From Diadema antillarum (taxonomy: Eukaryota), in contig NW_027271115.1 in assembly GCF_040938485.1 (NCBI RefSeq), positions 3,162,001 through 3,226,000 on the forward strand: a stretch of 64,000 nt of DNA. The letters are read 5' to 3'. The position numbers and the translations under genes were made by a program. Below the pieces are notes generated by a model, which was not told the origin of the DNA, made no database searches, and saw nothing but the letters and a program-made list of their open reading frames with translations. Positions 12,499 through 32,420 of the stretch are shown here, in pieces; within the stretch, counting starts at the first letter, position 1, and each line of letters starts with the position of its first letter.

Positions 12499-15400
12499 GT
12501 GTGTGTGTGTGTGTGTGATCCCCCCCCCCCCCCCCCCCAATTACAGTGATGTGTAGGCCTACATGTTGTATGTGAAAGTTTCTCTCCAACTGGAAAAATT
12601 TGTGCTGGCTGTGTTTTTTCCTTCTAAAGCAGTGGCATTCTACAATGCAATCAACTCTGTCCATAGCCAATGAATTGTCATCAATTTCTTGTCTTCAATC
12701 ACACAGAAGCAAGCAAGGATGAATTCAGAAAAGGAATGCCCTTTTGACTTACAGAAATGCGTAGTCTAGTTGCTTGCCACAAATCTTTATTTGTAGAGCT
12801 TGAAGTGTGCCTGTGAGACCTTTGGTCATACCGGGGTCCATGTTCATACGTACCATGCTACAGAGATGACTTTCCTTGCTGAGCAAACAGTAATTACCAT
12901 TTGTATCAAAGTGTAATTTGTCAAATCTGGCATACCTGACTGGTAGAGCCCCTCCTACTGTGGTGTCTTACTAATAGTAAGATGCTTCTTGATTTACAGT
13001 GTACACTTGTATTTTTGTTTACCATTTTGATGTTACTTGTGCTTCCTGCAGTGAAGGCATTTTCCATTTTAAGCAAAGAGCAAATGCTAGATGTTAGACT
13101 TTGGAAAGATTTTAACTTTGAAATGGAAATTAATGCCATGTAAGAAACCATTTTTTTTTTTTTTTTTAAAGGGAGAATGGGGTTGTGCATTTCTTATGTT
13201 TCCTGATTTTTTGCTTGCTTTTCAAACATTTTGTGTCTGTGTTGTTTCATGGTTTATATCAGTGAATGAGGACTTGGGTCATAGGAATCATGTGACGAGG
13301 GGCTTTTCTAAGTTTGATCATGGGATTGTTGTGATGGGTCTCTGCAGAATGAACATTCCTCCCCTCATGTTTTTTTTTTTTTTATTCTGTCACTGCAGGC
13401 ATCTCGGGCAAGTCACAGGTCCTGTTTGCCCTCGTCTTCACCACCCGCTATCTGGACCTCCTCACCAGCTTCATCTCCATCTATAACACGTCCATGAAGA
13501 TCATCTACCTGATGTGTGCCTATGCCACCGTCTACATGATTTACGTCAAGTTCAAGGCGACGTACGACAGCAACCACGACACGTTCAGGATGGAATTCCT
13601 GGTGGTGCCTGTCGGTGGACTGGCATTCCTTGTCAACCACGACTTCTCCCCGCTGGAGGTAACTTTGCTGAAACTCCCCTTTGGTTGCCTGCACTGAGAG
13701 AATGATATAGTGACATAGATGTCATTCTGATTAAGAATTCGGCAGCTATGTGTGCGCGTGTACATGTAGGCTGAAGTGGAATTCATGATCCAAAGCAGAG
13801 CTGTGTCCAATCTGTTGCACTTAATTTCAGTGTATGCCTGCAGTAGGAAACGTGTGTGCAAACTGTCCAGGTATTGATTTGTGAGGAGGTAGCAAAACCA
13901 ACAGCAAAATAAGAACCAGGAAACTTGAGTTTACAAACACGGTAAAAAAAAAATGAAGTTCCTCCTTCCAGACTCATCAAATATCTTCTTCTTCTTTTTC
14001 TTTTTTTTTCCAGAAAGATGAAAGGCATGAACAATTGCATGCCGTAAACAGTACCTGTAACTTTAAGAAAAAATTTTTTTTTTTCTTACAGTGAGTGAAA
14101 ATCTGAATTAAAATCAGAATAGATGATAAAATGACATCAACCCATTTGGCAATATTTATGATCAAACCACCAATTCTCTCCACGTTACAAGTCTGTCTTC
14201 CTTTTTTGCATTTGCATTATTGGATGTAAATTTTATAACAAGTATTTCCCAGGAAAATTATGTTGGTATATTGTTTTGTGCAAATTTGCTATGTACCTGT
14301 ATACATGTTTTCCTGAATTGGGGGGGGGGGGGGGGGGGGAAGAAGAAAAGAGAAGAGGACAAGTGATTGTAAGTGATTGAATAATGCCATTTTTGGAATA
14401 CATTTGTCAAAAATATATCAAATGTCATATGAGCTTACAGTTTGTTGTATGTCATGATATAACCTTTTCTCTTTCCTGTCAGATCCTATGGACCTTCTCC
14501 ATCTACCTTGAATCGGTGGCCATCCTACCGCAGCTCTTCATGATCAGCAAGACGGGCGAGGCAGAGACCATCACCAGCCATTACCTCTTCTGCCTAGGAG
14601 CCTACCGGGCCCTGTACATCGTGAACTGGGTCTACCGCTTCTATGCTGAGGGCTTTTTCGATCTCATCGCCATCGTGGCGGGCTGCGTTCAGACAATACT
14701 TTACTGCGACTTCTTCTACCTTTACATCACTAAAGGTGAGTGTTGACGCTGTCACATGTGCAAGTCTGGGGCTGCTTTTCGGTGAATGAAAGGGGGGTGA
14801 TTGAAACTGCCACCCATCCCTATTGCTATAGCAATTGTCAATCAGCTTCCAGCACTTAGGTAATGTCCATAACATCTGCACTCAAAATGCATTGAAATTT
14901 TTAAAATTGGATATGACCAGGATTATGTGCAGAATGATGTGAGAATACCAAGGAAGCAGCATCTACCAGAAGGTTTTCAGTGGGGAGTTTTTCCTCTTTC
15001 ACTGACATGACATTAAAATGATCTGAAGACTCTTTCCACAAAATATCAAGATTGTGTGTTCTTCAACTATGCCAATTTTTCATCTTGTGTGTGGTCGACC
15101 TCGGCAAGGTTAGCTTCTTGAAACTGCCTTGATTTTGATGTTTGAATGCTGGCAGCCATGACATTTGAGATTCTCGTTAAAGCCAACGGAAAGCATATTT
15201 TTCAGAAGGGCTCAATATTCGTCTTCCACTATTTGGAATTTACTTGCAATATATTGATTTGCCAGGATGAGTTGTTTAAGATCAAAAGAGAAAAAGAATT
15301 TTGATCGTATGCATATGCTTTTTATTCATGAAGAGCCGTCCCCATTCAGTAGTGGGTAGGTGGAACACAGTGTGATGATCAATCGTGCCCTTAGCTTTTG

Positions 15401-23639: not shown

Positions 23640-23857
23640 CAAGCAAATCAATGTCGGATCGAAGTTCGTGGTCTTTTATTACATTTACCCTGAAATGACC
23701 CCAACTTGAAGAAGTTAACGATGAAAACGTACACGCCTCTTTTCCCTGTGTGGTAGCCGGCTCAGGAAAATCTCCTCCTAACTCCCTCACGGCTTAGTCA
23801 GCTTTATGATCCTCACTTCTTCTGCAATACACGTGCGTCTCTCAGGATATAAACAGG
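23640..23857 (+). other. probable non-coding first exon of the saposin/KDEL gene (5' boundary uncertain)
   Basis: Donor CAGG/gtgagt at 23857/23858. The ATG exon opens with acceptor ctttctcacgcag at 24926, only 8 nt before the ATG, so an upstream exon is implied. Confidence 0.5.
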
Positions 23858-24703
23858 GTGAGTTAAAACAATTCAGACTATGATAATTGTTGTCTGCAAG
23901 CACATTTCTCTCACCTATAAAGTTACTCAAGTTCTAGCTGTTCTATGCCGACGTTTAACTGTACGTGGTTGAGTGTATTATCTGATAAGCGAGTTCATAA
24001 CATTGCCTCAGCGAGTAGAAAGGTACCTTTGACGATTCATGGAGATAGCTCCATTGTTGGATGTGATTGTGCCCTACGGTGTTCAAAGCTGAGCAAGTCT
24101 ACTGCAACCTAATAGCAGGGCACATCCTCCCCGAACCTTGTCATGGGGTACAAGTACTAGTAATCTATCGTATACGTGTATAGTCTTTTGGAGGTCGGTC
24201 AGAGTCGGCAGTGCTAGCCCTCGCTGTGCCCTACCAGTACCAATGGTTTATGGAAATGGTGCAGAGCAAATTCTGTTGCACATAACAGTGTACATGTCAT
24301 TGTGTGCTGGGTTACAACAGGGAGGTCACCTCCCTGGTTACAACCACCTCTATACTGGGAGTAATACTAGTAATAGACGGGCATAATTCTATATGGTTGT
24401 GTTCGATCTGCGCTGCGTGGCTCTGATCTCTGTAGCGGGTGTTCAAAAAATACGTGTAAGACGGCATTGATGTTTAACCTTGCCAAGAACAAGAAAGTAT
24501 AGGAGGGCGGTGTTAGCAGTGATACAAACAGGTGGTATAAGCCCAAGATCGGGGAATAAATATATGAACGAGAAATGCTTGTAATATACTTTGCCAAGAA
24601 GGAACCAATCGCCCCCTAGCTTTCATCCAGTGAATATTTTGTACGGGCATCACGGTCGTCACTAAACTTATGTAGATGTTTACCCATAGATGCAATACAC
24701 ACT

Positions 24704-24706
<3 letters not shown>

Positions 24707-24745
<39 letters not shown>
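24707..24745. repeat. (CA)n microsatellite
   Basis: Direct reading. Confidence 0.95.
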
Positions 24746-24749
<4 letters not shown>

Positions 24750-24934
24750 TATATGCCCCTATGATATATATATATATAATTATATATATATTAGGCCTAT
24801 TAAATGTTAAAGGCTGGAAAGAAAAAAGAAATAGGTGTCAAAAATGCAGATAATTGTCCTGCATATAAAAATATGAATCTTCTTACATATTCGCGATCAT
24901 CATAATGTGCACGCTTTCTCACGCAGATCTGAAA

Positions 24935-25080
24935 ATGCAGCTCTCTTCAGTTTTGGTGTCTCATCTCCTGCTTGTTGTGAATCTACTTCATCACGCACAA
25001 GGCGAAATGAAGCCGACTAAATTTGCCAAAGGTTTGTGCTATCACATTATAATGATTATCTTGACATTATGAATGCATGA

Positions 25081-25142
<62 letters not shown>

Positions 25143-27783
25143 GTACGTGTACAGGGTTGCCCAGAAAGAACGGAACACATAAGATCTTTAATTTCAGTAA
25201 TATAGTTGCAAATATATCATTATTTTGCATACTATTGGAAAAGCCATTTCTCTTCCAATAGAATGACACAAAGTTGTTTGGTTGATGCGTTATGATTTTA
25301 GGACCATTTCTGTCAACCCTTGCCATTTTCAAAATGTGATCATTTTGCACTCTCAGAGATACCGAAACCAGCGAGAATTCGGCTTGCCATAGAACTAGTA
25401 GCGTTCACAATGTGTGGAATGTGGGGCGGAGGGTGTAATTGTCATTGTCCGTTATCATTGTGAATAATGTGAATGTCATTGTGAATATCATTGTGAATGC
25501 TACTGGTTCTATGGCAAGCCGAATTCTCGTTGGTTTCAGTATCTCTCAGAGTACAAAATGATCACATTTTGAAAATTGCAAGGGTCGACAAAAATGGTTC
25601 TAAAAATCCTAACACATTGCATTAACCAAAATTAAAGAGCTTGGTGTCATTCTATTGGAAAAAGAGTCGTCTTTCCAAAAGTGTGCAAAATAATGACACA
25701 TTTTTAACAATATTGCTGAAATTAAAGATCTTAGGTGTTCCGTTCTTTCTGGGCCACCCTGTATATATTTATAAAGTAGTAAAAGTTTGAGCCCAAATTG
25801 TTCAGTATAGGACCTAGTTGTTTTTGAATCTCTCAGACATTTCAAAAACGATTTTCATTTAATGAACTTTGGATTCCTCTTAGAACTGAATGCTCTTTCT
25901 CATTATCTCACAAAACAAGTGAAAAATCTGAAGCCCCATATCAACCAAAAATATATCTTCCCTTAAATTACCGTTCTTATTATCAATCACCCGATTGACA
26001 TTCATTATTCAGGTTATCAAATTAGTCTAAAATATGATAACTGGGCGATGTGCTATCAAGTGGTCATCCAATTATCAATTGTTCATAGTTTTGAGTCATC
26101 TGTTTCATTTTAAGGATTGGATGTCTGGGGCGGATCCAGGAATTCCGTAAAAAAAGGGGCGCCTTTACCATATCAAAAGGGTGCACCCCCCCATTTTTTC
26201 ATTTTATTTCTTTTGTTTCAATAAAAATAAAAGGGGGGGGGGCGCACCTGGTGCATCACCGCATGGATCCGCCACTGGTATATTGATAAGTCGGGCAAGC
26301 TTCAGCCACAACCTATACGGAAGTGTTAAACCATCATTATGGAGAGAAAATGCAGAATACTCGAAACGTTTGAATATACAGTGATGTAAGTGAAACAGTC
26401 AGTCGCATATCATTTTTAAAGAAGTTGTATTTAGCTTCCAGCGTACTCGGGCAAACTCTATAGAACATGTTCGTTCCTCTCTTTTTTCCGAAAGAGTTTT
26501 CATAAAAGTAAGGGGGTAATTTCAGCATAATCTAATCCCACAGTTGTTGGTCCCAGCCTTACTGTCTTCTCCATTGACCGATACTTGATGCGGTGACGTC
26601 AATGTTAATTTTCCCAGCCCTAAATTAATCCTTAATCCTATCCCATACCCCTAGTCTATAAGCCCACGTCCATAAACACTTGTTTCGAATTCTTAAATGC
26701 AAAAGTTAGTTCTAGTCTTCTTGATATCATATTCCAGCAGGAAATTAACCCCCATGTGAGTTGTAGAATAAATTTGTTACTTTGTCCATTTGAATCAAAG
26801 GTTGTGTTCATGAAGTCAAACTAATTAAGCGCTTCCGTCATTATTATTATCTAGATCATAATACACCATGACAAATGTCGATTATGTTGAGAAAGTAATG
26901 CTATCATATACTTTCGTATCGAGTGATCGCAAGAAAGTGCATAGTTTCGAAATTTCTGCGTCCTCTTCCTAAATTACCGGATCATTACACTGATTTAAAT
27001 GACACTGACTTGTTCAAAATAAGTCATAAAACTGTGCAATATTGAACGTGTGAGTGATTGATAACACCTGGTTGTCATTAATAAAAACAGACAATCTGGG
27101 CAATCTTTGTACATGTATCTATTATGAATATAATCAGTTGTACTGATATTGCTTATGGAGTGTCGAAAATATAAAGCAAAATTGAATGATTCTTTGATGA
27201 ATATTATCGAGCTGAAATAAAAATGGATTCATCTGGTTGCTCTTTCAGAGGTGGTTTGCGAAGGATGCCACGCAGTAATAGCAGGTATGAACATGGAGCT
27301 CTGCTTTGTACTTAGTTTTATTTTTTTTTTCTCTCCTTGTCATCACATCATCAATAATGCTTCGTAAGCAGTTGTTAACGTCCATGAACTACGCAAAGGT
27401 TTTTTTTTTTTTCAACAACCAAAAAAAGTTCTTCCTTGACTCTATGCTAATTTCTATGTTTATGCTGGTGTCCTTTAATCTTTAGTGTCGTAATTATGAG
27501 ATAATGCGCTTTTGCAAGATTTTATTCGGACAATCGGACAATTCAATGTGGCTTCGATCCGAGATAGGCCTAAAATACACTCAGGGTTATCTGCAGAGTA
27601 TCTGGTTTTGAGAACTCCGAAGAAGAATCGTAACTACAAAATCGAAGTCGATCATACGGCATGATGTTAGATTGACAGATAAGTCGATATATGTAATAGT
27701 GATTGATCATAACCATCTATTATTATGCCCTTGATATAAAAGAATTCAGACAAGAGGTAAAAGAGTGATAGTGTATTTGTGCA

Positions 27784-27833
<50 letters not shown>

Positions 27834-29797
27834 TTTATGTTTGCGTGTAATCTCGATTGACTGCATGTGCAGAGAGTCAATTCTTGTCAAGTCTTTATAA
27901 CTCCTCTTTATACGTCGGAGTTGATGATTACAACTGCTTATACACTTCACACTTTAATGGAGTTATTGCCAGTGAACATTTTGATTTTGTATTTGTTTCT
28001 AGAGGCGAATAAGATCTTGGGGAAGGGGAAAAGGACCGACAAAGTGGTCAAGAACACGATGAAGGCCGTGTGTAATGTCCAGAGGCTGAATTCGTATGAG
28101 TTCAGTCCGCCCAACATGAATAAGGTCTGCGACTATTGGACAAGTGAGTATTACCGTGTGATTTTGATGATTAATGGATGGATACTTATACTGGTAGTAA
28201 CATATATTCTATAGCGGCGGTATCAAACATATTTGTAGTAATGTAAATGATGAATCATAATGTGAATCATAACAGTTACTAATGGCAGTGACAATGATAC
28301 AATGGATCGTCAGTCATCACAAGGGCGGATCCATGAGGGGGGGGGGGGGAGGCGCTTTTACAGAATTAAAAAGGGGCGCACGTGCCCATCCATTTTTTCT
28401 TTTTATTTCTTTTGTTTTAACAAAAACTAAAGGGGAGGGGGCGCCCGGTGCGCCCCCTCTGGATCCGCAAGTGGTCAATAACGATAACAGTAAAAGCAAT
28501 TTATAATTTCCCCATACAAGTATACAATTCATGAACTAGTGATTAAAGAAACAAACCAACAGAGCAGTGATTTTCTCATCATGCTTGCTTATACATGTAC
28601 GAACATTATGTTTTATGAACATTATTACAATCGTATCAATATTCTCGTATCTTTTGCGATTATTGTTTTTATGTATCCTGTTGTGATTTTGTTCATCACT
28701 GTCACCTATAATTGCTGTTCGAATGAATAATTCTTGTTTTCGCTGCAACTGATCGACAGATTGCCATATACATCGACGTATAAAGATAAATAGATATGCA
28801 CCGCGAACATTCAGTTTATGTAAATAGTAGCCATGATACAATCGCATATAATGTGGCTGTGTATATTCCTGTTATTGTTCAAACAATCCCTTCTTCCAAC
28901 TCCGGAAAACAGAAATCGAGAGAGAGAGGGAGAGAGAGAGAGAGAGTAAGAGAGAGAGAGAAAAGAGGAAGAAGAAGAAGAAGAAGAAGAAGAAGAAGAG
29001 AGTGTACAACAAAGCAAAGCAAAAACAAAACCCCACAAATTCAATGATTATGATATTCGTAGAATGAGTATTATTTTCATAGCATAATGTCTTGTGAGCG
29101 CACACGTACATGACGACAGATCATGTAAAATAATATTAACGTTATCAAATGTCGACAAAACCACATAGCACAGGTTCACAATAGATTGATAACTACAAAC
29201 ATTCGCGAGCGACAAAATTATATTGTATAGTCCATGTGGTAATAACTCAATGATTCCTATTAATGATTTACCTTGTTCATTTATCACAATTCTATACTGG
29301 TGGCGGTCTATAAATAGCTGAGTCATTAATTCTAATACCNNNNNNNNNNNNNNNNNNNNNNNNNNNNNNNNNNNNNNNNNNNNNNNNNNNNNNNNNNNNN
29401 NNNNNNNNNNNNNNNNNNNNNNNNNNNNNNNNNNNNNNNNNNNNNNNNNNNNNNNNNNNNNNNNNNNNNNNNNNNNNNNNNNNNNNNNNNNNNNNNNNNN
29501 NNNNNNNNNNNNNNNNNNNNNNNNNNNNNNNNNNNNNNNNNNNNNNNNNNNNNNNNNNNNNNNNNNNNNNNNNNNNNNNNNNNNNNNNNNNNNNNNNNNN
29601 NNNNAATAATAATGTGTTAAATAATACATGGCGTGCCGGTAACAAAGCTTAAAACCCATTCGCCTCTCTTTGCATGGATCCTCTGCTTTCGAACTAATAT
29701 TGAATGATATTTTATGTCCTTTCTCCCTCTGCTTCTATTCCGAAGTTATCTTGTATTTTTATTGGTGAAATTGGACGCTACTTCGACTATTTATCCG

Positions 29798-29830
<33 letters not shown>

Positions 29831-31314
29831 CCACACAAACACACACATGTGTGTACATTATGATATAAATGTGTGTGTGTATTTATTCCTATGTAGGGGC
29901 CTAAGTGAGATAATGTAAATAATGTATCTTTCACATTGTTCGCGTCTAATATCTACTACATACACCTCAAAATTATACTGAAAATCTCCGTCTTCACAAT
30001 GAGATAAAGCCTCGTGACACCCACTGTCAAACATGTTTCTTATGTGGCATCCCTTTGCTTCTTCTGTCCAGCAAACTACATGTCGGAGATCACGGCAGCC
30101 CTGACCAACGGTCTACCCGAGGAGGAGCAGGAGATTGAACTCTGCTTCGTGACCACCGATATCTGTAAAGGAGTCGATCGATCAAAGTTTAGGATCAACA
30201 AGTATCAAGGACCAGTGAGTTCAGAATCGTTTATAGGATGAAAATGAATACAGTATGAATTTAAAAAAAAATGGAGATAGGTTTTATTTTTCCTCTCAAT
30301 ACTCACTTTTGAATGATTATCTTTTTTCTTATTAGAATCCAGCATTCAGTGTGTTACTGAAAATAATTTAAAAAAAATATTTTCGACTTCTATCCTATAA
30401 AGCTATGTCGACTGTTTTTTTTTAATATTATTTTCAGACCCAGAGCAATATAACATTTACTCCCTTATATCAACTCATCAAAGATATTGTCATTTATCAA
30501 GAAGTCGTCTGTTTACTTTAAATTTGTCTAAACACAACCATTAACACCATGTCCCATCTCAAGGTGCAAATGTACATGTAACGCCATCCATTCTTTCAAG
30601 CAGTTATATCCATTTAATGTCGACTGAAGATGACACTTATACAGATATTGCATGCGATGTCAAATAAGAGTTCAATCTATCCCTAGATCTACCTGTCAGA
30701 AATGAAAGTTACAGTTCAGCTTTTGTTTTTGTTGAATGCTATAGGTCCTATAATATATACGGGGGGACTTCCAGTCACTTTGCTAAAGGCGTAATTGTGA
30801 CTATTGTAAACTTTGTAAGGGATGCACCTCGTGACGAGAGAAGTTATGTTTTACAATAATTTCAATACGATATTCCATCAAGTTCTACAATCTTATGGTG
30901 CGTATGATGGGGATAAGTGGGATTTTTGGTAAGCAGAACGAACGAAAAATCTTCTTTTTAAAGTCTTTACAATCCTGCATTTGCAATTATGAGCTTATTG
31001 CTTAATAATTTTTAATTTTGTTAGTTTATCTTTGATATCTCTATATTGTTTTGCTTCTTATTCAGAGCAAGAGGAAAATCCAAGCTGCACTAAAGGCGGC
31101 GAAGGGTGAAACGGACTCCAGCGTTCAGGACGGGGAAGATGATGAGGAGAAAGCTGGCGACGACGTCACAACCACGGAACCAACGCCGACACGGACCGAA
31201 CAGGAAGAAAAGGAAGACGAACCAAAGAAGGAGGGGAAGAAAGAAGAGAAACAGAAGAAAAAGAAAGGCTCGAAGAAAGGAAAGAAATCAAAAGACTCTA
31301 AGGATGAACTTTGA
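24935..31314 (+). CDS. uncharacterised ER-resident saposin-B/Canopy-like protein, 221 aa, signal peptide + C-terminal KDEL
   Basis: Exons 24935-25031 (97 nt), 27249-27284 (36), 28003-28143 (141), 30072-30214 (143), 31066-31314 (249); phases compatible, GT-AG, 666 nt. Protein: MQLSSVLVSHLLLVVNLLHHAQG-EMKPTKFAKEVVCEGCHAVIAEANKILGKGKRTDKVVKNTMKAVCNVQRLNSYEFSPPNMNKVCDYWTTNYMSEITAALTNGLPEEEQEIELCFVTTDICKGVDRSKF...acidic/Lys-rich tail...SKDSKDEL*. Six Cys in saposin order (CxxC...C...C...Cx6C). Confidence 0.9.
25080..25141. repeat. (TA)n microsatellite
   Basis: Direct reading. Confidence 0.95.
25152..25761. mobile_element. TA-flanked Tc1/mariner-type MITE with ~260-bp inverted arms
   Basis: TA|CAGGGTTGCCCAGAAAGAACGGAACAC ... 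GTGTTCCGTTCTTTCTGGGCCACCCTG|TA; central (cattgtgaat)-like tandem; adjoins a (TA)n tract. Confidence 0.85.
26127..26277. mobile_element. short interspersed GGCGGATCC-ended MITE (copy 1)
   Basis: ggggcggatccagg ... tggatccgccactg; second copy at 28322-28474. Confidence 0.7.
27788..27826. repeat. (GT)n microsatellite
   Basis: Direct reading. Confidence 0.95.
28322..28474. mobile_element. short interspersed GGCGGATCC-ended MITE (copy 2)
   Basis: agggcggatcca ... ggcgcccggtgcgccccctctggatccgc; same internal layout as 26127-26277. Confidence 0.7.
28918..28998. repeat. compound (GA)n/(GAA)n microsatellite
   Basis: Direct reading. Confidence 0.95.
29340..29604. other. assembly gap (265 N)
   Basis: Run of N in the intron between coding exons 3 and 4 of the saposin/KDEL gene. 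Confidence 0.99.
29800..29828. repeat. (CA)n microsatellite
   Basis: Direct reading. Confidence 0.95.
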
Positions 31315-31609
31315 TGATCATCGAAACACCTTTTACTTATCTTATCGAGACAAATTTCATAAATGAAAACACAAATTGATACTCACTAATGAGGTGACAT
31401 TATTTCGAATACCGATGAATGTACTATCTGACGCGTACTGAAATGCTTTACTTCTGAATAATTTCGTTTTCGTGCTTAGTGTGTGTGCTAAGTCGCCAAG
31501 AAATGAAACACTCGTTTTACGGATATATACTAATCAGAAAGTGTCCATGTACGCATTTAAATTGTATTCATATCATTTTGTGTCCTTATTTTATCTGAAA
31601 TGTACTCTA

Positions 31610-32420
31610 TAGGTTTTCCCGCCCATTTTCGCCATCATTTGTAATTCAGTTATGTAAAATGTGTTTTCAATTTCGCCTCGGACACTGATGGAATGTGCCA
31701 ATGCTAGTTTTAAGGAATTTTCGTCTTTTGTCGATCAATTTTGAAAAGTTGTCATTAGATTCCGTGCTCTGTCGCCCATTTTCGTCAGCTGCAATATACA
31801 AGTGCGTCGATCACAGCAGCCGAGCACGAGGCAACAAAATTAATTTTGTCTATTGGCATTTATTTTCATCTGAGTTTTACTCTAAATCGTTTTCATACAC
31901 AGTACATTATGCTCTGCAAATTATTGCCATAATACTCAGTACATTTACGTCACTTTAACCATACATAAAAACACATTTTCGTCGCTCATATAATCATACC
32001 TAACACTTTTTTTTTGTTCACAGCACTCACTTTCTCGTAGCTATCCAGTCGACGGAAATGGTTTAAAATCTAGCTGGCTTACCCTCTATATAAGGGCCCA
32101 TAATACTTGGAATTTGAATGACCAAATGATTAATTATGTTTGGAAAATGACGCATTTGATCCTGCACTCCTATATTTACTAAGCGGCAACGACGAATTAC
32201 AGTGACAGCTTTGACGAATATGAATGCTTAGCCTTTCAACTTGATTGACAAAATATGAATATGAAGGAAAATTTGACGAAATTAAACCTATTGAACTTAG
32301 TAAGCTCCTTCGGACGAAATTTAATTGAAAGTTGATGAAATTGAATCGAAAGTTGACGAACTTGAATTGAAAGCTAATGAAATTGAATGAAGAGATGACG
32401 AAAATGGGCAGGAAAGCCTA
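31610..32420. mobile_element. degenerate inverted-repeat element with internal ~20-bp tandem units
   Basis: TIR taggttttcccgcccattttcgccatc / gatgacgaaaatgggcaggaaagccta; ttttcgtc units on the left, gacgaaa / aattgaaagttgacgaa units on the right. Confidence 0.55.

What the first reader, a model, noticed from the sequence alone, without database searches (positions are those of the whole stretch)
24935..31314. Orphan ER-resident saposin-fold protein with an acidic/basic tail and KDEL
Seen: a five-coding-exon gene largely missed by the ORF track (includes a 36-nt micro-exon carrying CEGC). It encodes a signal peptide, six Cys in saposin order, a YEFSPPNM motif, an acidic stretch, a Lys-rich stretch and KDEL. 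Known: Canopy (CNPY2-4, Seele) and MZB1 are ER saposin-like co-chaperones, and CNPY2 ends its domain with Cx6C as here, but they carry long insertions that this compact domain lacks. Inference: a distinct, perhaps undescribed family of ER saposin-like chaperones or lipid-binding factors.
Basis: partly seen in the sequence, partly recalled or inferred. Interest (0 to 1): 0.72.

Follow-up and report, generated by a model that had tools for sequence, protein, structure and literature searches.

The report
Echinoderm ER-retained compact saposin-like protein
This is a real, strongly conserved sea-urchin gene for a small saposin-fold protein that is kept in the endoplasmic reticulum; it belongs to an unnamed family found so far only in echinoderms, and its function has not been tested.

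Summary
Five GT-AG coding exons (24935-31314, + strand), including a 36-nt micro-exon, splice into a 221-aa ORF. It has a signal peptide, six Cys in saposin order, invariant YEFSPP, an acidic then Lys-rich tail, and KDEL. The spliced product is identical to the annotated 'uncharacterized protein' XP_071482568.1 of Diadema antillarum.

The N gap (29340-29604) lies inside intron 3. Orthologues read straight across the exon 3/4 junction, so it hides no coding exon of this isoform.

Orthologues exist in echinoids, asteroids, an ophiuroid and crinoids, one gene per species, with the same intron positions where checked. All are unnamed and all end in K/S-D/E/T-EL. dN/dS against D. setosum is 0.012 over residues 1-140.

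No Pfam family reaches threshold (SapB_1 and DUF3456 only sub-threshold). The AlphaFold model is a four-helix saposin fold. It is closest to NK-lysin, saposin D and granulysin (Z 9-10) and less close to pERp1/MZB1 (6.6) and MANF (6.4).

Verdict: a distinct, echinoderm-restricted family of ER-retained saposin-like proteins, not an orphan and not a recognisable Canopy orthologue. Function is inferred only: probably a partner-specific luminal cofactor, alternatively a lipid binder.

The scan had not noted this before on other DNA.

The parts
23806..23857 (+). Upstream 5' exon; its 5' end was not determined. It carries an in-frame ATG at 23806 and a GT donor at 23858. It is probably 5'UTR, and is annotated as coding only in the 241-aa model P0014.
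   Evidence: The peptide of P0014 residues 1-17 is found exactly here, followed by GTGAGT. In D. setosum the exon is conserved as DNA but has 4-nt and 1-nt indels, so it is not under protein constraint. Orthologues start at the downstream Met.
24935..25031 (+). Coding exon 1 (the acceptor of the exon is at 24927). It holds the start codon, the signal peptide (aa 1-23, 24935-25003) and the conserved mature N-terminus K-P-T-K-F-A-K.
   Evidence: hydrophobic core at aa 6-20; helix 2-21. The start aligns with the start of the orthologues.
27249..27284 (+). 36-nt micro-exon carrying Cys36 and Cys39 (C-E-G-C) at the start of helix 1.
   Evidence: A 36-nt exon at the same position is found in S. purpuratus, D. 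setosum, Antedon and Amphiura.
28003..28143 (+). Coding exon 3: the rest of helix 1, helix 2 with Cys68, the invariant loop Y-E-F-S-P-P (28095-28112), and the start of helix 3 with Cys87.
   Evidence: An exhaustive HMMER search with this exon found the orthologues.
29340..29604 (.). Assembly gap (265 N) inside intron 3. It does not touch the coding sequence.
30072..30214 (+). Coding exon 4: helix 3, helix 4 with Cys116, Cys123, and the conserved post-domain motif G-V-D-R-x-x-F-R-I-N-K-Y-x-G-P (aa 125-139; the block counted, aa 124-139, is 30167-30214).
   Evidence: 12 of 16 columns invariant.
31066..31314 (+). Coding exon 5: a basic amphipathic helix (aa 141-155), a disordered acidic then Lys-rich tail, KDEL (31300-31311) and the stop codon (31312-31314).
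   Evidence: (pLDDT below 50 from aa 156).

Best explanation
This is a functional single-copy gene of Diadema antillarum for a soluble ER-luminal protein, belonging to a family so far seen only in echinoderms. Shown or directly read: an N-terminal signal peptide; a compact four-helix saposin-like (SAPLIP) domain at about aa 33-124, with six Cys at the saposin positions; a very conserved 15-residue extension after the last Cys; a disordered charged tail of very variable length; and a C-terminal KDEL-type tetrapeptide in every family member examined. Inferred from the saposin pattern: the disulfides are C36-C123, C39-C116 and C68-C87. Inferred mechanism: the protein is imported into the ER and oxidised to three disulfides. 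It is then retrieved from the early Golgi by the KDEL receptor, so it acts in the ER lumen. The most conserved parts are not only the hydrophobic core. They also include an exposed loop (YEFSPP), the mature N-terminus (KPTKFAKE) and the post-domain motif (GVDRxxFRINKYxGP). For that reason I think it most likely docks onto a specific, conserved luminal protein partner and works as a client- or chaperone-specific cofactor. That would resemble what the ER saposin-like proteins Canopy/MZB1 do with GRP94 and MANF does with BiP. The Lys-rich tail may add electrostatic binding to acidic partners or membranes.
For: - Gene reality: the ORF splices cleanly and is identical to an annotated protein.
- Intron positions, including the micro-exon, are conserved across three echinoderm classes.
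- dN/dS is 0.075 overall and 0.012 for aa 1-140, with 19 synonymous changes against 1 non-synonymous.
- Family: ten proteins from echinoids, asteroids, an ophiuroid and crinoids, with 40 invariant columns.
- Fold: AF2 pLDDT block means are 78-91 across the four helices (59 in the YEFSPP loop).
- The top matches are all saposin-fold proteins: NK-lysin Z 9.9, rmsd 1.7 A over 78/78 residues; saposin D 9.5; Na-SLP-1 9.2; granulysin 9.0; saposin C 8.2; pERp1 6.6; MANF 6.4.
- A profile of the family hits saposin C in the PDB at E 0.004.
- ER retention: the C-termini are KDEL, KEEL, SDEL or KTEL in all ten.
- Partner-binding inference: 7 of 13 loop columns and 12 of 16 post-domain columns are invariant, against 0 of 78 in the tail.
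- The domain net charge is only -1 to +2.
- Known ER SAPLIPs act as co-chaperones (PMC6566547).
Against: - No expression data could be obtained.
- No partner, lipid or localisation has been tested.
- The second AF2 model (Amphiura orthologue) was of low confidence (mean pLDDT 51), although it has the same helix order.
- The alignment is shallow (10 sequences).
- Structurally the domain is nearer to lipid-interacting saposins and NK-lysin than to pERp1/MZB1, which fits a lipid role at least as well.
- No ER-stress element above chance was found in the window.
- KTEL (Amphiura) and SDEL (Patiria) were not checked here for receptor binding.
Confidence: 0.5

Rival explanations
1. The protein is ER-resident, but the saposin domain works on lipids. 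It would bind, extract or present a lipid, or remodel the luminal leaflet of the ER membrane. The polybasic tail would hold it on acidic lipids.
For: The best structural matches are the lipid- and membrane-active SAPLIPs: NK-lysin, saposins D, C and A, granulysin and Na-SLP-1. The only sequence-level similarity to a solved protein is to saposin C. The Lys-rich tail is net +5 to +8 in six of the ten members.
Against: The tail is almost absent in Amphiura and net neutral in Diadema and Patiria. The strongest conservation is in exposed, polar or aromatic linear motifs rather than in the amphipathic faces. No lipid assay has been done.
Confidence: 0.27
2. It is a strongly diverged true member of the Canopy/MZB1 (DUF3456) family that lost the H2-H3 insertion, and it works as a GRP94 co-chaperone.
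For: There are sub-threshold DUF3456 hits in the three starfish orthologues: E 0.0076, 0.12 and 0.54, with the same alignment range. It shares CxxC and Cx6C spacing with CNPY1, 2 and 5, and it has charged tails before the retrieval signal, as CNPY3 (poly-Lys) and CNPY4 (poly-Glu) do (PMC6566547). It also has an ER retrieval signal.
Against: The best DUF3456 score is 17.1 bits against a cut-off of 21.1, and seven of the ten members gave no listed hit at the thresholds used (four scanned at E<=1, the rest at E<=10). The family profile does not hit pERp1 in the PDB at E<=10, while it does hit saposin C. Z to pERp1 is 6.6, against 9-10 for classical saposins. Sea urchins carry a separately named Cnpy4 gene (PMC12630818; I did not verify that gene's identity).
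Confidence: 0.15
3. It is a secreted or lysosomal saposin/NK-lysin-like effector (antimicrobial or sphingolipid activator), and the C-terminal tetrapeptide is incidental.
For: It has a compact saposin fold, and the best match is NK-lysin.
Against: The xxEL terminus is kept in all ten family members examined, across about half a billion years by my own estimate, while the preceding tail is free to vary. The domain is near neutral, unlike cationic lytic SAPLIPs (the charge of NK-lysin is from my own knowledge). There is one gene per species, with no expansion of the kind typical of immune effectors.
Confidence: 0.05

Closest known systems
Canopy family and MZB1/pERp1 (CNPY1-5; Pfam PF11938 DUF3456)
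   Same: They are soluble ER-luminal SAPLIPs with a signal peptide, six Cys including an N-terminal CxxC and (in CNPY1, 2 and 5) a C-terminal Cx6C, and a KDEL-type terminus. CNPY3 and CNPY4 carry poly-Lys or poly-Glu stretches just before the retrieval signal (PMC6566547).
   Different: No member reaches the DUF3456 threshold. The H2-H3 connection is a 13-residue loop instead of the roughly 40-residue insertion. The family-specific invariant motifs (YEFSPP, GVDRxxFRINKYxGP) do not appear in that paper's description of CNPY-specific regions. Structural similarity to pERp1 (Z 6.6) is lower than to classical saposins.
Classical compact SAPLIPs: saposins A-D, NK-lysin, granulysin, hookworm Na-SLP-1
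   Same: The domain has the same size, four helices and Cys spacing. Z is 8.2-9.9 with rmsd 1.7-2.6 A over the whole target chain. There is weak sequence similarity to saposin C (E 0.004) and to SapB_1 (E 0.027).
   Different: Those proteins are lysosomal, granule-stored or secreted (my own knowledge). This one has a conserved ER retrieval signal, a conserved post-domain motif and a charged tail, and its domain is near neutral. The Pfam SapB thresholds are not met.
MANF/CDNF
   Same: They are ER-resident proteins with a KDEL-like terminus and a saposin-like N-domain. MANF binds the BiP nucleotide-binding domain (PDB 6ha7, listed). Z is 6.0-6.4.
   Different: MANF has a second SAP-like C-domain with its own CxxC and eight Cys in total (my own knowledge). 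Nothing like that is present here.

Membership tests
SAPLIP superfamily (saposin fold) | Six Cys in the order C-x2-C ... C ... C ... C-x5/6-C | tested here: met
   Cys are at 36, 39, 68, 87, 116 and 123. C68, C87, C116 and C123 are invariant; C36 and C39 are present in every full-length member.
SAPLIP superfamily (saposin fold) | Bundle of four or five helices that superposes on solved saposin-like proteins | tested here: met
   The AF2 helices are 29-50, 57-69, 83-103 and 108-119, with pLDDT block means of 78-91. NK-lysin gives Z 9.9 and rmsd 1.7 A over 78/78 residues, and the top 14 entries are all saposin-fold proteins. Caveat: the second model was of low confidence.
SAPLIP superfamily (saposin fold) | Disulfide pairing C1-C6, C2-C5, C3-C4 | not testable with these tools
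The pairing is inferred from the superposition and needs mass spectrometry or a solved structure.
SAPLIP superfamily (saposin fold) | Pfam SapB_1/SapB_2 above the gathering score | tested here: not met
   The best SapB_1 score is 14.9 bits (E 0.027) against a cut-off of 25.2, and there is no SapB_2 hit. UniRef's name for two orthologues ('Saposin B-type domain-containing') is the source's own label and was not re-tested.
Canopy/MZB1 (PF11938 DUF3456) | Pfam DUF3456 above the gathering score (21.1 bits) | tested here: not met
   The best score is 17.1 bits (Acanthaster orthologue). The Diadema, Strongylocentrotus, Lytechinus, Antedon, Anneissia and Amphiura proteins gave no listed hit at the thresholds used.
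Canopy/MZB1 (PF11938 DUF3456) | Long family-specific insertion between helices H2 and H3 | tested here: not met
   Only 13 residues (70-82) separate H2 and H3. The Canopy alignment omits about 40 residues there, e.g. 93-133 (PMC6566547).
Canopy/MZB1 (PF11938 DUF3456) | Signal peptide plus C-terminal KDEL-type retrieval signal | tested here: met
Canopy/MZB1 (PF11938 DUF3456) | Association with GRP94 and its clients | not testable with these tools
   This needs a pull-down experiment.

The most novel reading that the evidence does not exclude
This would be a third, independent lineage of ER-resident saposin-like cofactors, beside Canopy/MZB1 and MANF, confined to echinoderms. It would use a classical compact saposin domain plus two new invariant docking motifs (the YEFSPP loop and GVDRxxFRINKYxGP) to serve a conserved ER chaperone or client. 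It has stayed next to a PRKCSH/MRH-domain gene in all four echinoderm classes with a readable locus.
Probability: 0.3. Interest if true: 0.55.

Novelty: new variant of a known kind. Interest (0 to 1): 0.36.

Why it matters
ER-resident saposin-like proteins (Canopy, MZB1, MANF) are few, and how they work is poorly understood. A compact, single-copy member would be a simple system for asking how a saposin fold is used in ER protein folding or lipid handling. This one is extremely conserved, lacks the Canopy insertions, and sits in sea urchins, where embryos can be manipulated experimentally. It also shows that micro-exon genes of this kind are easily missed by ORF-based scans. Otherwise it is an ordinary, already annotated, lineage-restricted gene of unknown function.

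Tried and rejected
- Pfam and PDB searches on single exons gave only noise.
- RNA evidence: the look-up of sequencing runs listed no RNA run, so read laying could not be used.
- Two long proteins hit by the exon-3 search (P0002, P0006) carry a repeated 'EFSSPY..DYWS'-like motif without the Cys pattern. Their score comes from many weak repeats, so I rejected them as relatives.
- A profile word search added no relative outside echinoderms.
- I considered a thioredoxin-like oxidoreductase because of the CxxC. I rejected it because the fold is a saposin fold and the two Cys sit at the saposin positions.
- An ERSE (CCAAT-N9-CCACG) scan of the window found no more matches than chance, and none near the 5' exon.
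- The N-terminally extended 241-aa model: the extension is not conserved as protein in D. setosum and is absent from the orthologues, so I treat it as 5'UTR.
- The second AF2 model (Amphiura) was too poor for a fold search.
- I did not type reference CNPY, MZB1 or saposin sequences from memory, so no hhalign comparison or phylogeny against them was run.
- I did not read the other contigs of this genome across the N gap.
Full report
**Observation**

I read 24500-31800 and spliced the proposed exons in a script. After correcting three boundaries by a few bases, the exons are 24935-25031, 27249-27284, 28003-28143, 30072-30214 and 31066-31314. Each intron starts with GT and ends with a polypyrimidine tract plus AG.

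The 666-nt CDS gives 221 aa. It has a hydrophobic N-terminus (aa 6-20) and Cys at 36, 39, 68, 87, 116 and 123. YEFSPPNM lies at 76-83. The tail has 23 acidic and 23 basic residues, acidic first and Lys-rich last, and the protein ends in KDEL.

**The gap**

The only N run in the window, 29340-29604, lies inside intron 3 (28144-30071). Exon 3 ends in phase 1 and exon 4 starts in phase 1. All orthologues align over '...VCDYWT|xxY...' without any extra residues. The second annotated copy in the same assembly (P0014) has the same residues there. The gap therefore does not interrupt or hide coding sequence of this isoform.

**Identity of the gene and of the genome**

Single exons gave nothing in Pfam or the PDB. 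The claim rests on absence of relatives, so I spent the exhaustive HMMER search on the exon 3 peptide. It returned four true relatives. From these a word search, a cluster look-up and a profile search gave the family:

- Strongylocentrotus purpuratus LOC115923535
- Lytechinus variegatus LOC121423325
- Diadema setosum
- Diadema antillarum (two records)
- Antedon mediterranea and Anneissia japonica (crinoids)
- Acanthaster planci, Patiria miniata and Asterias rubens (asteroids)
- Amphiura filiformis (ophiuroid)

All are 'uncharacterized protein' in NCBI. UniRef calls two of them 'Saposin B-type domain-containing protein'.

My spliced model is identical to P0013, XP_071482568.1 of D. antillarum. 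The assembly GCA_040938485.1 carries the gene on two contigs with the same neighbours. The span from the upstream ATG to the stop in the window (7509 nt) equals the gene span on JBFRCO010000227.1.

No relative outside echinoderms was found, and none from holothurians. Absence is limited by the 46-aa query of the exhaustive search and by the word index of the other searches.

**Support for the gene model without RNA**

No RNA run was listed, so the junctions could not be tested with reads. Three other lines support the model.

- The same five coding exons, including a 36-nt second exon, occur at the same residues in S. purpuratus, D. setosum, Antedon and Amphiura.
- Between D. antillarum and D. 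setosum there are 25 synonymous and 8 non-synonymous differences (dN/dS 0.075). For aa 1-140 the counts are 19 and 1 (0.012), and for the tail dN/dS is 0.27.
- Intron 2 is about 90% identical over its first 400 nt.

An upstream exon ending at 23857 splices to an acceptor at 24927 and has an in-frame ATG at 23806; this is the 241-aa model P0014. In D. setosum that exon has 4-nt and 1-nt indels, and the orthologues start at the downstream Met. I therefore take 24935 as the start and the upstream exon as 5'UTR.

**Anatomy and conservation**

Forty alignment columns are invariant in ten sequences. By segment:

| Segment | Invariant columns |
|---|---|
| H2-H3 loop (YEFSPP) | 7 of 13 |
| Helix 3 | 8 of 21 |
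| Helix 4 | 7 of 16 |
| aa 124-139, after the last Cys (GVDRxxFRINKYxGP) | 12 of 16 |
| Tail | 0 of 78 |

The mature N-terminus K-P-T-K-F-A-K-E-V-V-C-E-G-C-H-A is nearly invariant in all full-length members.

Tails range from 16 aa (Amphiura) to 82 aa (Diadema). The long acidic stretch is confined to echinoids and is longest in Diadema. Most tails are net basic. The last four residues are KDEL, KEEL, SDEL or KTEL. The domain itself is near neutral, at -1 to +2.

**Fold**

AlphaFold2 with the ten-sequence alignment gave four helices (29-50, 57-69, 83-103, 108-119) with pLDDT block means of 78-91 (59 in the YEFSPP loop). It also gave a short helix at 132-135, a basic helix at 141-155 and a disordered tail.

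Foldseek's top hits were saposin C, granulysin, NK-lysin, saposin A and saposin D, with target TM-scores of 0.66-0.76. The E-values were weak, as expected for about 80 residues. The Foldseek-independent search of 48,161 chains gave these matches:

| Match | Z | rmsd, aligned residues |
|---|---|---|
| NK-lysin | 9.9 | 1.7 A, 78/78 |
| Saposin D | 9.1 | |
| Granulysin | 9.0 | |
| Na-SLP-1 | 8.8 | |
| Human pERp1/MZB1 | 6.6 | |
| CDNF | 6.0 | |

The second look agreed and added saposin C at 8.2 and MANF at 6.4. The tool warns that Z below about 13 can be unspecific for helical bundles. Here, though, the top 14 entries are all saposin-fold proteins, they cover whole chains, and the Cys pattern agrees.

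A second model for the Amphiura orthologue was of low confidence (mean pLDDT 51) with the same helix order. I did not search with it.

**Family tests**

With full-length proteins, no Pfam family passes its cut-off.

- SapB_1 reaches 14.9 bits (E 0.027, cut-off 25.2).
- DUF3456 reaches 17.1, 13.2 and 11.1 bits in the three starfish proteins only (cut-off 21.1).
- A profile of the family hits saposin C in the PDB at E 0.004, and does not list pERp1 at E<=10.

Schildknegt et al. (PMC6566547) describe Canopy proteins as ER SAPLIPs with the following features:

- CxxC at the N-terminus;
- Cx6C in CNPY1, 2 and 5;
- family-specific sequence between H2 and H3;
- poly-Lys (CNPY3) or poly-Glu (CNPY4) before the retrieval signal;
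- termini HDEL, PDEL, PEDL or REEL;
- a proposed role as GRP94 co-chaperones.

The present protein shares the logic (ER location, SAPLIP domain, CxxC, Cx6C, charged tail). It lacks the insertion and fails the family model. A sea urchin (Hemicentrotus) has a separately named Cnpy4 (PMC12630818). That suggests this gene is not simply the echinoderm Canopy, but I could not verify that gene's sequence.

**Context**

In the window the last large exon of a KDEL-receptor gene lies upstream (14384-14743, PF00810, E 1.6e-26). A PRKCSH/MRH-domain gene of about 294 aa lies downstream on the minus strand, from about 37300.

- The order KDEL receptor, this gene, PRKCSH gene is the same in S. purpuratus.
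- The PRKCSH-domain neighbour is also present in D. setosum, Antedon and Amphiura.

I read this as conserved microsynteny supporting orthology. I do not infer a functional link from it.

**Mechanism**

Shown: the gene, its conservation, the fold prediction and the retrieval-type terminus.

Inferred: import into the ER, three disulfides in the saposin pattern, and retrieval by the KDEL receptor.

The choice between a protein-partner cofactor (my preference, 0.5) and a lipid or membrane role (0.27) rests on where conservation lies. It is concentrated in exposed linear motifs and a loop rather than on the amphipathic faces, the tail varies freely, and the domain is neutral. This is an argument, not a test.

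**Novelty**

No paper in the held library mentions the loci or an echinoderm ER saposin. The gene is annotated but unnamed. It is a new variant within a known kind (ER-resident SAPLIPs) and of moderate interest.

Noticed in passing
window 14384-14743 (+): This is an exon of a KDEL-receptor gene (PF00810 ER_lumen_recept, E 1.6e-26), about 9 kb upstream of the 5' exon of this KDEL-bearing protein's gene. The same order is seen in S. purpuratus and on the second D. antillarum contig. It is a curious adjacency of receptor and ligand-type genes. I take it as synteny only.
   Followed up: partly
window from about 37300 onward (-): A PRKCSH/MRH-domain gene (294-300 aa product; possibly GNPTG-like, which is my guess from its size) is the downstream neighbour. 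It lies on the opposite strand in both Diadema species, Antedon and Amphiura, and on the same strand in S. purpuratus.
   Followed up: partly
window 25150-25763: A roughly 615-nt foldback element lies in intron 1. Its outer arms are 130 nt (85% complementary) and its inner arms 117 nt (91%), which looks MITE-like.
   Followed up: no
window 26186-26245 and 28385-28444: Two copies (87% identical over 60 nt) of a short element flanked by G-rich and GGATCC-containing ends sit in intron 1 and intron 3. It is probably a dispersed MITE.
   Followed up: no
window 54928-55266 (+): This is an exon with the start of a BTB_2 (KCTD-type) domain (E 2.5e-06).
   Followed up: no
L001 versus window: The same assembly holds the gene on two contigs (129 kb and 4.19 Mb) with identical protein and neighbours. 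The start-to-stop span is 6301 nt on the short contig against 6380 nt in the window. This is probably an uncollapsed haplotype. I did not read the intron to see where the 79 nt differ.
   Followed up: no
P0002 (2827 aa): This is an unrelated long protein with about a dozen repeats of an 'R-E-F-S-S-P-Y...D-Y-W-S' motif that mimics the YEFSPP...DYW stretch, plus a PRDM4-type zinc knuckle. Its source is unknown.
   Followed up: partly
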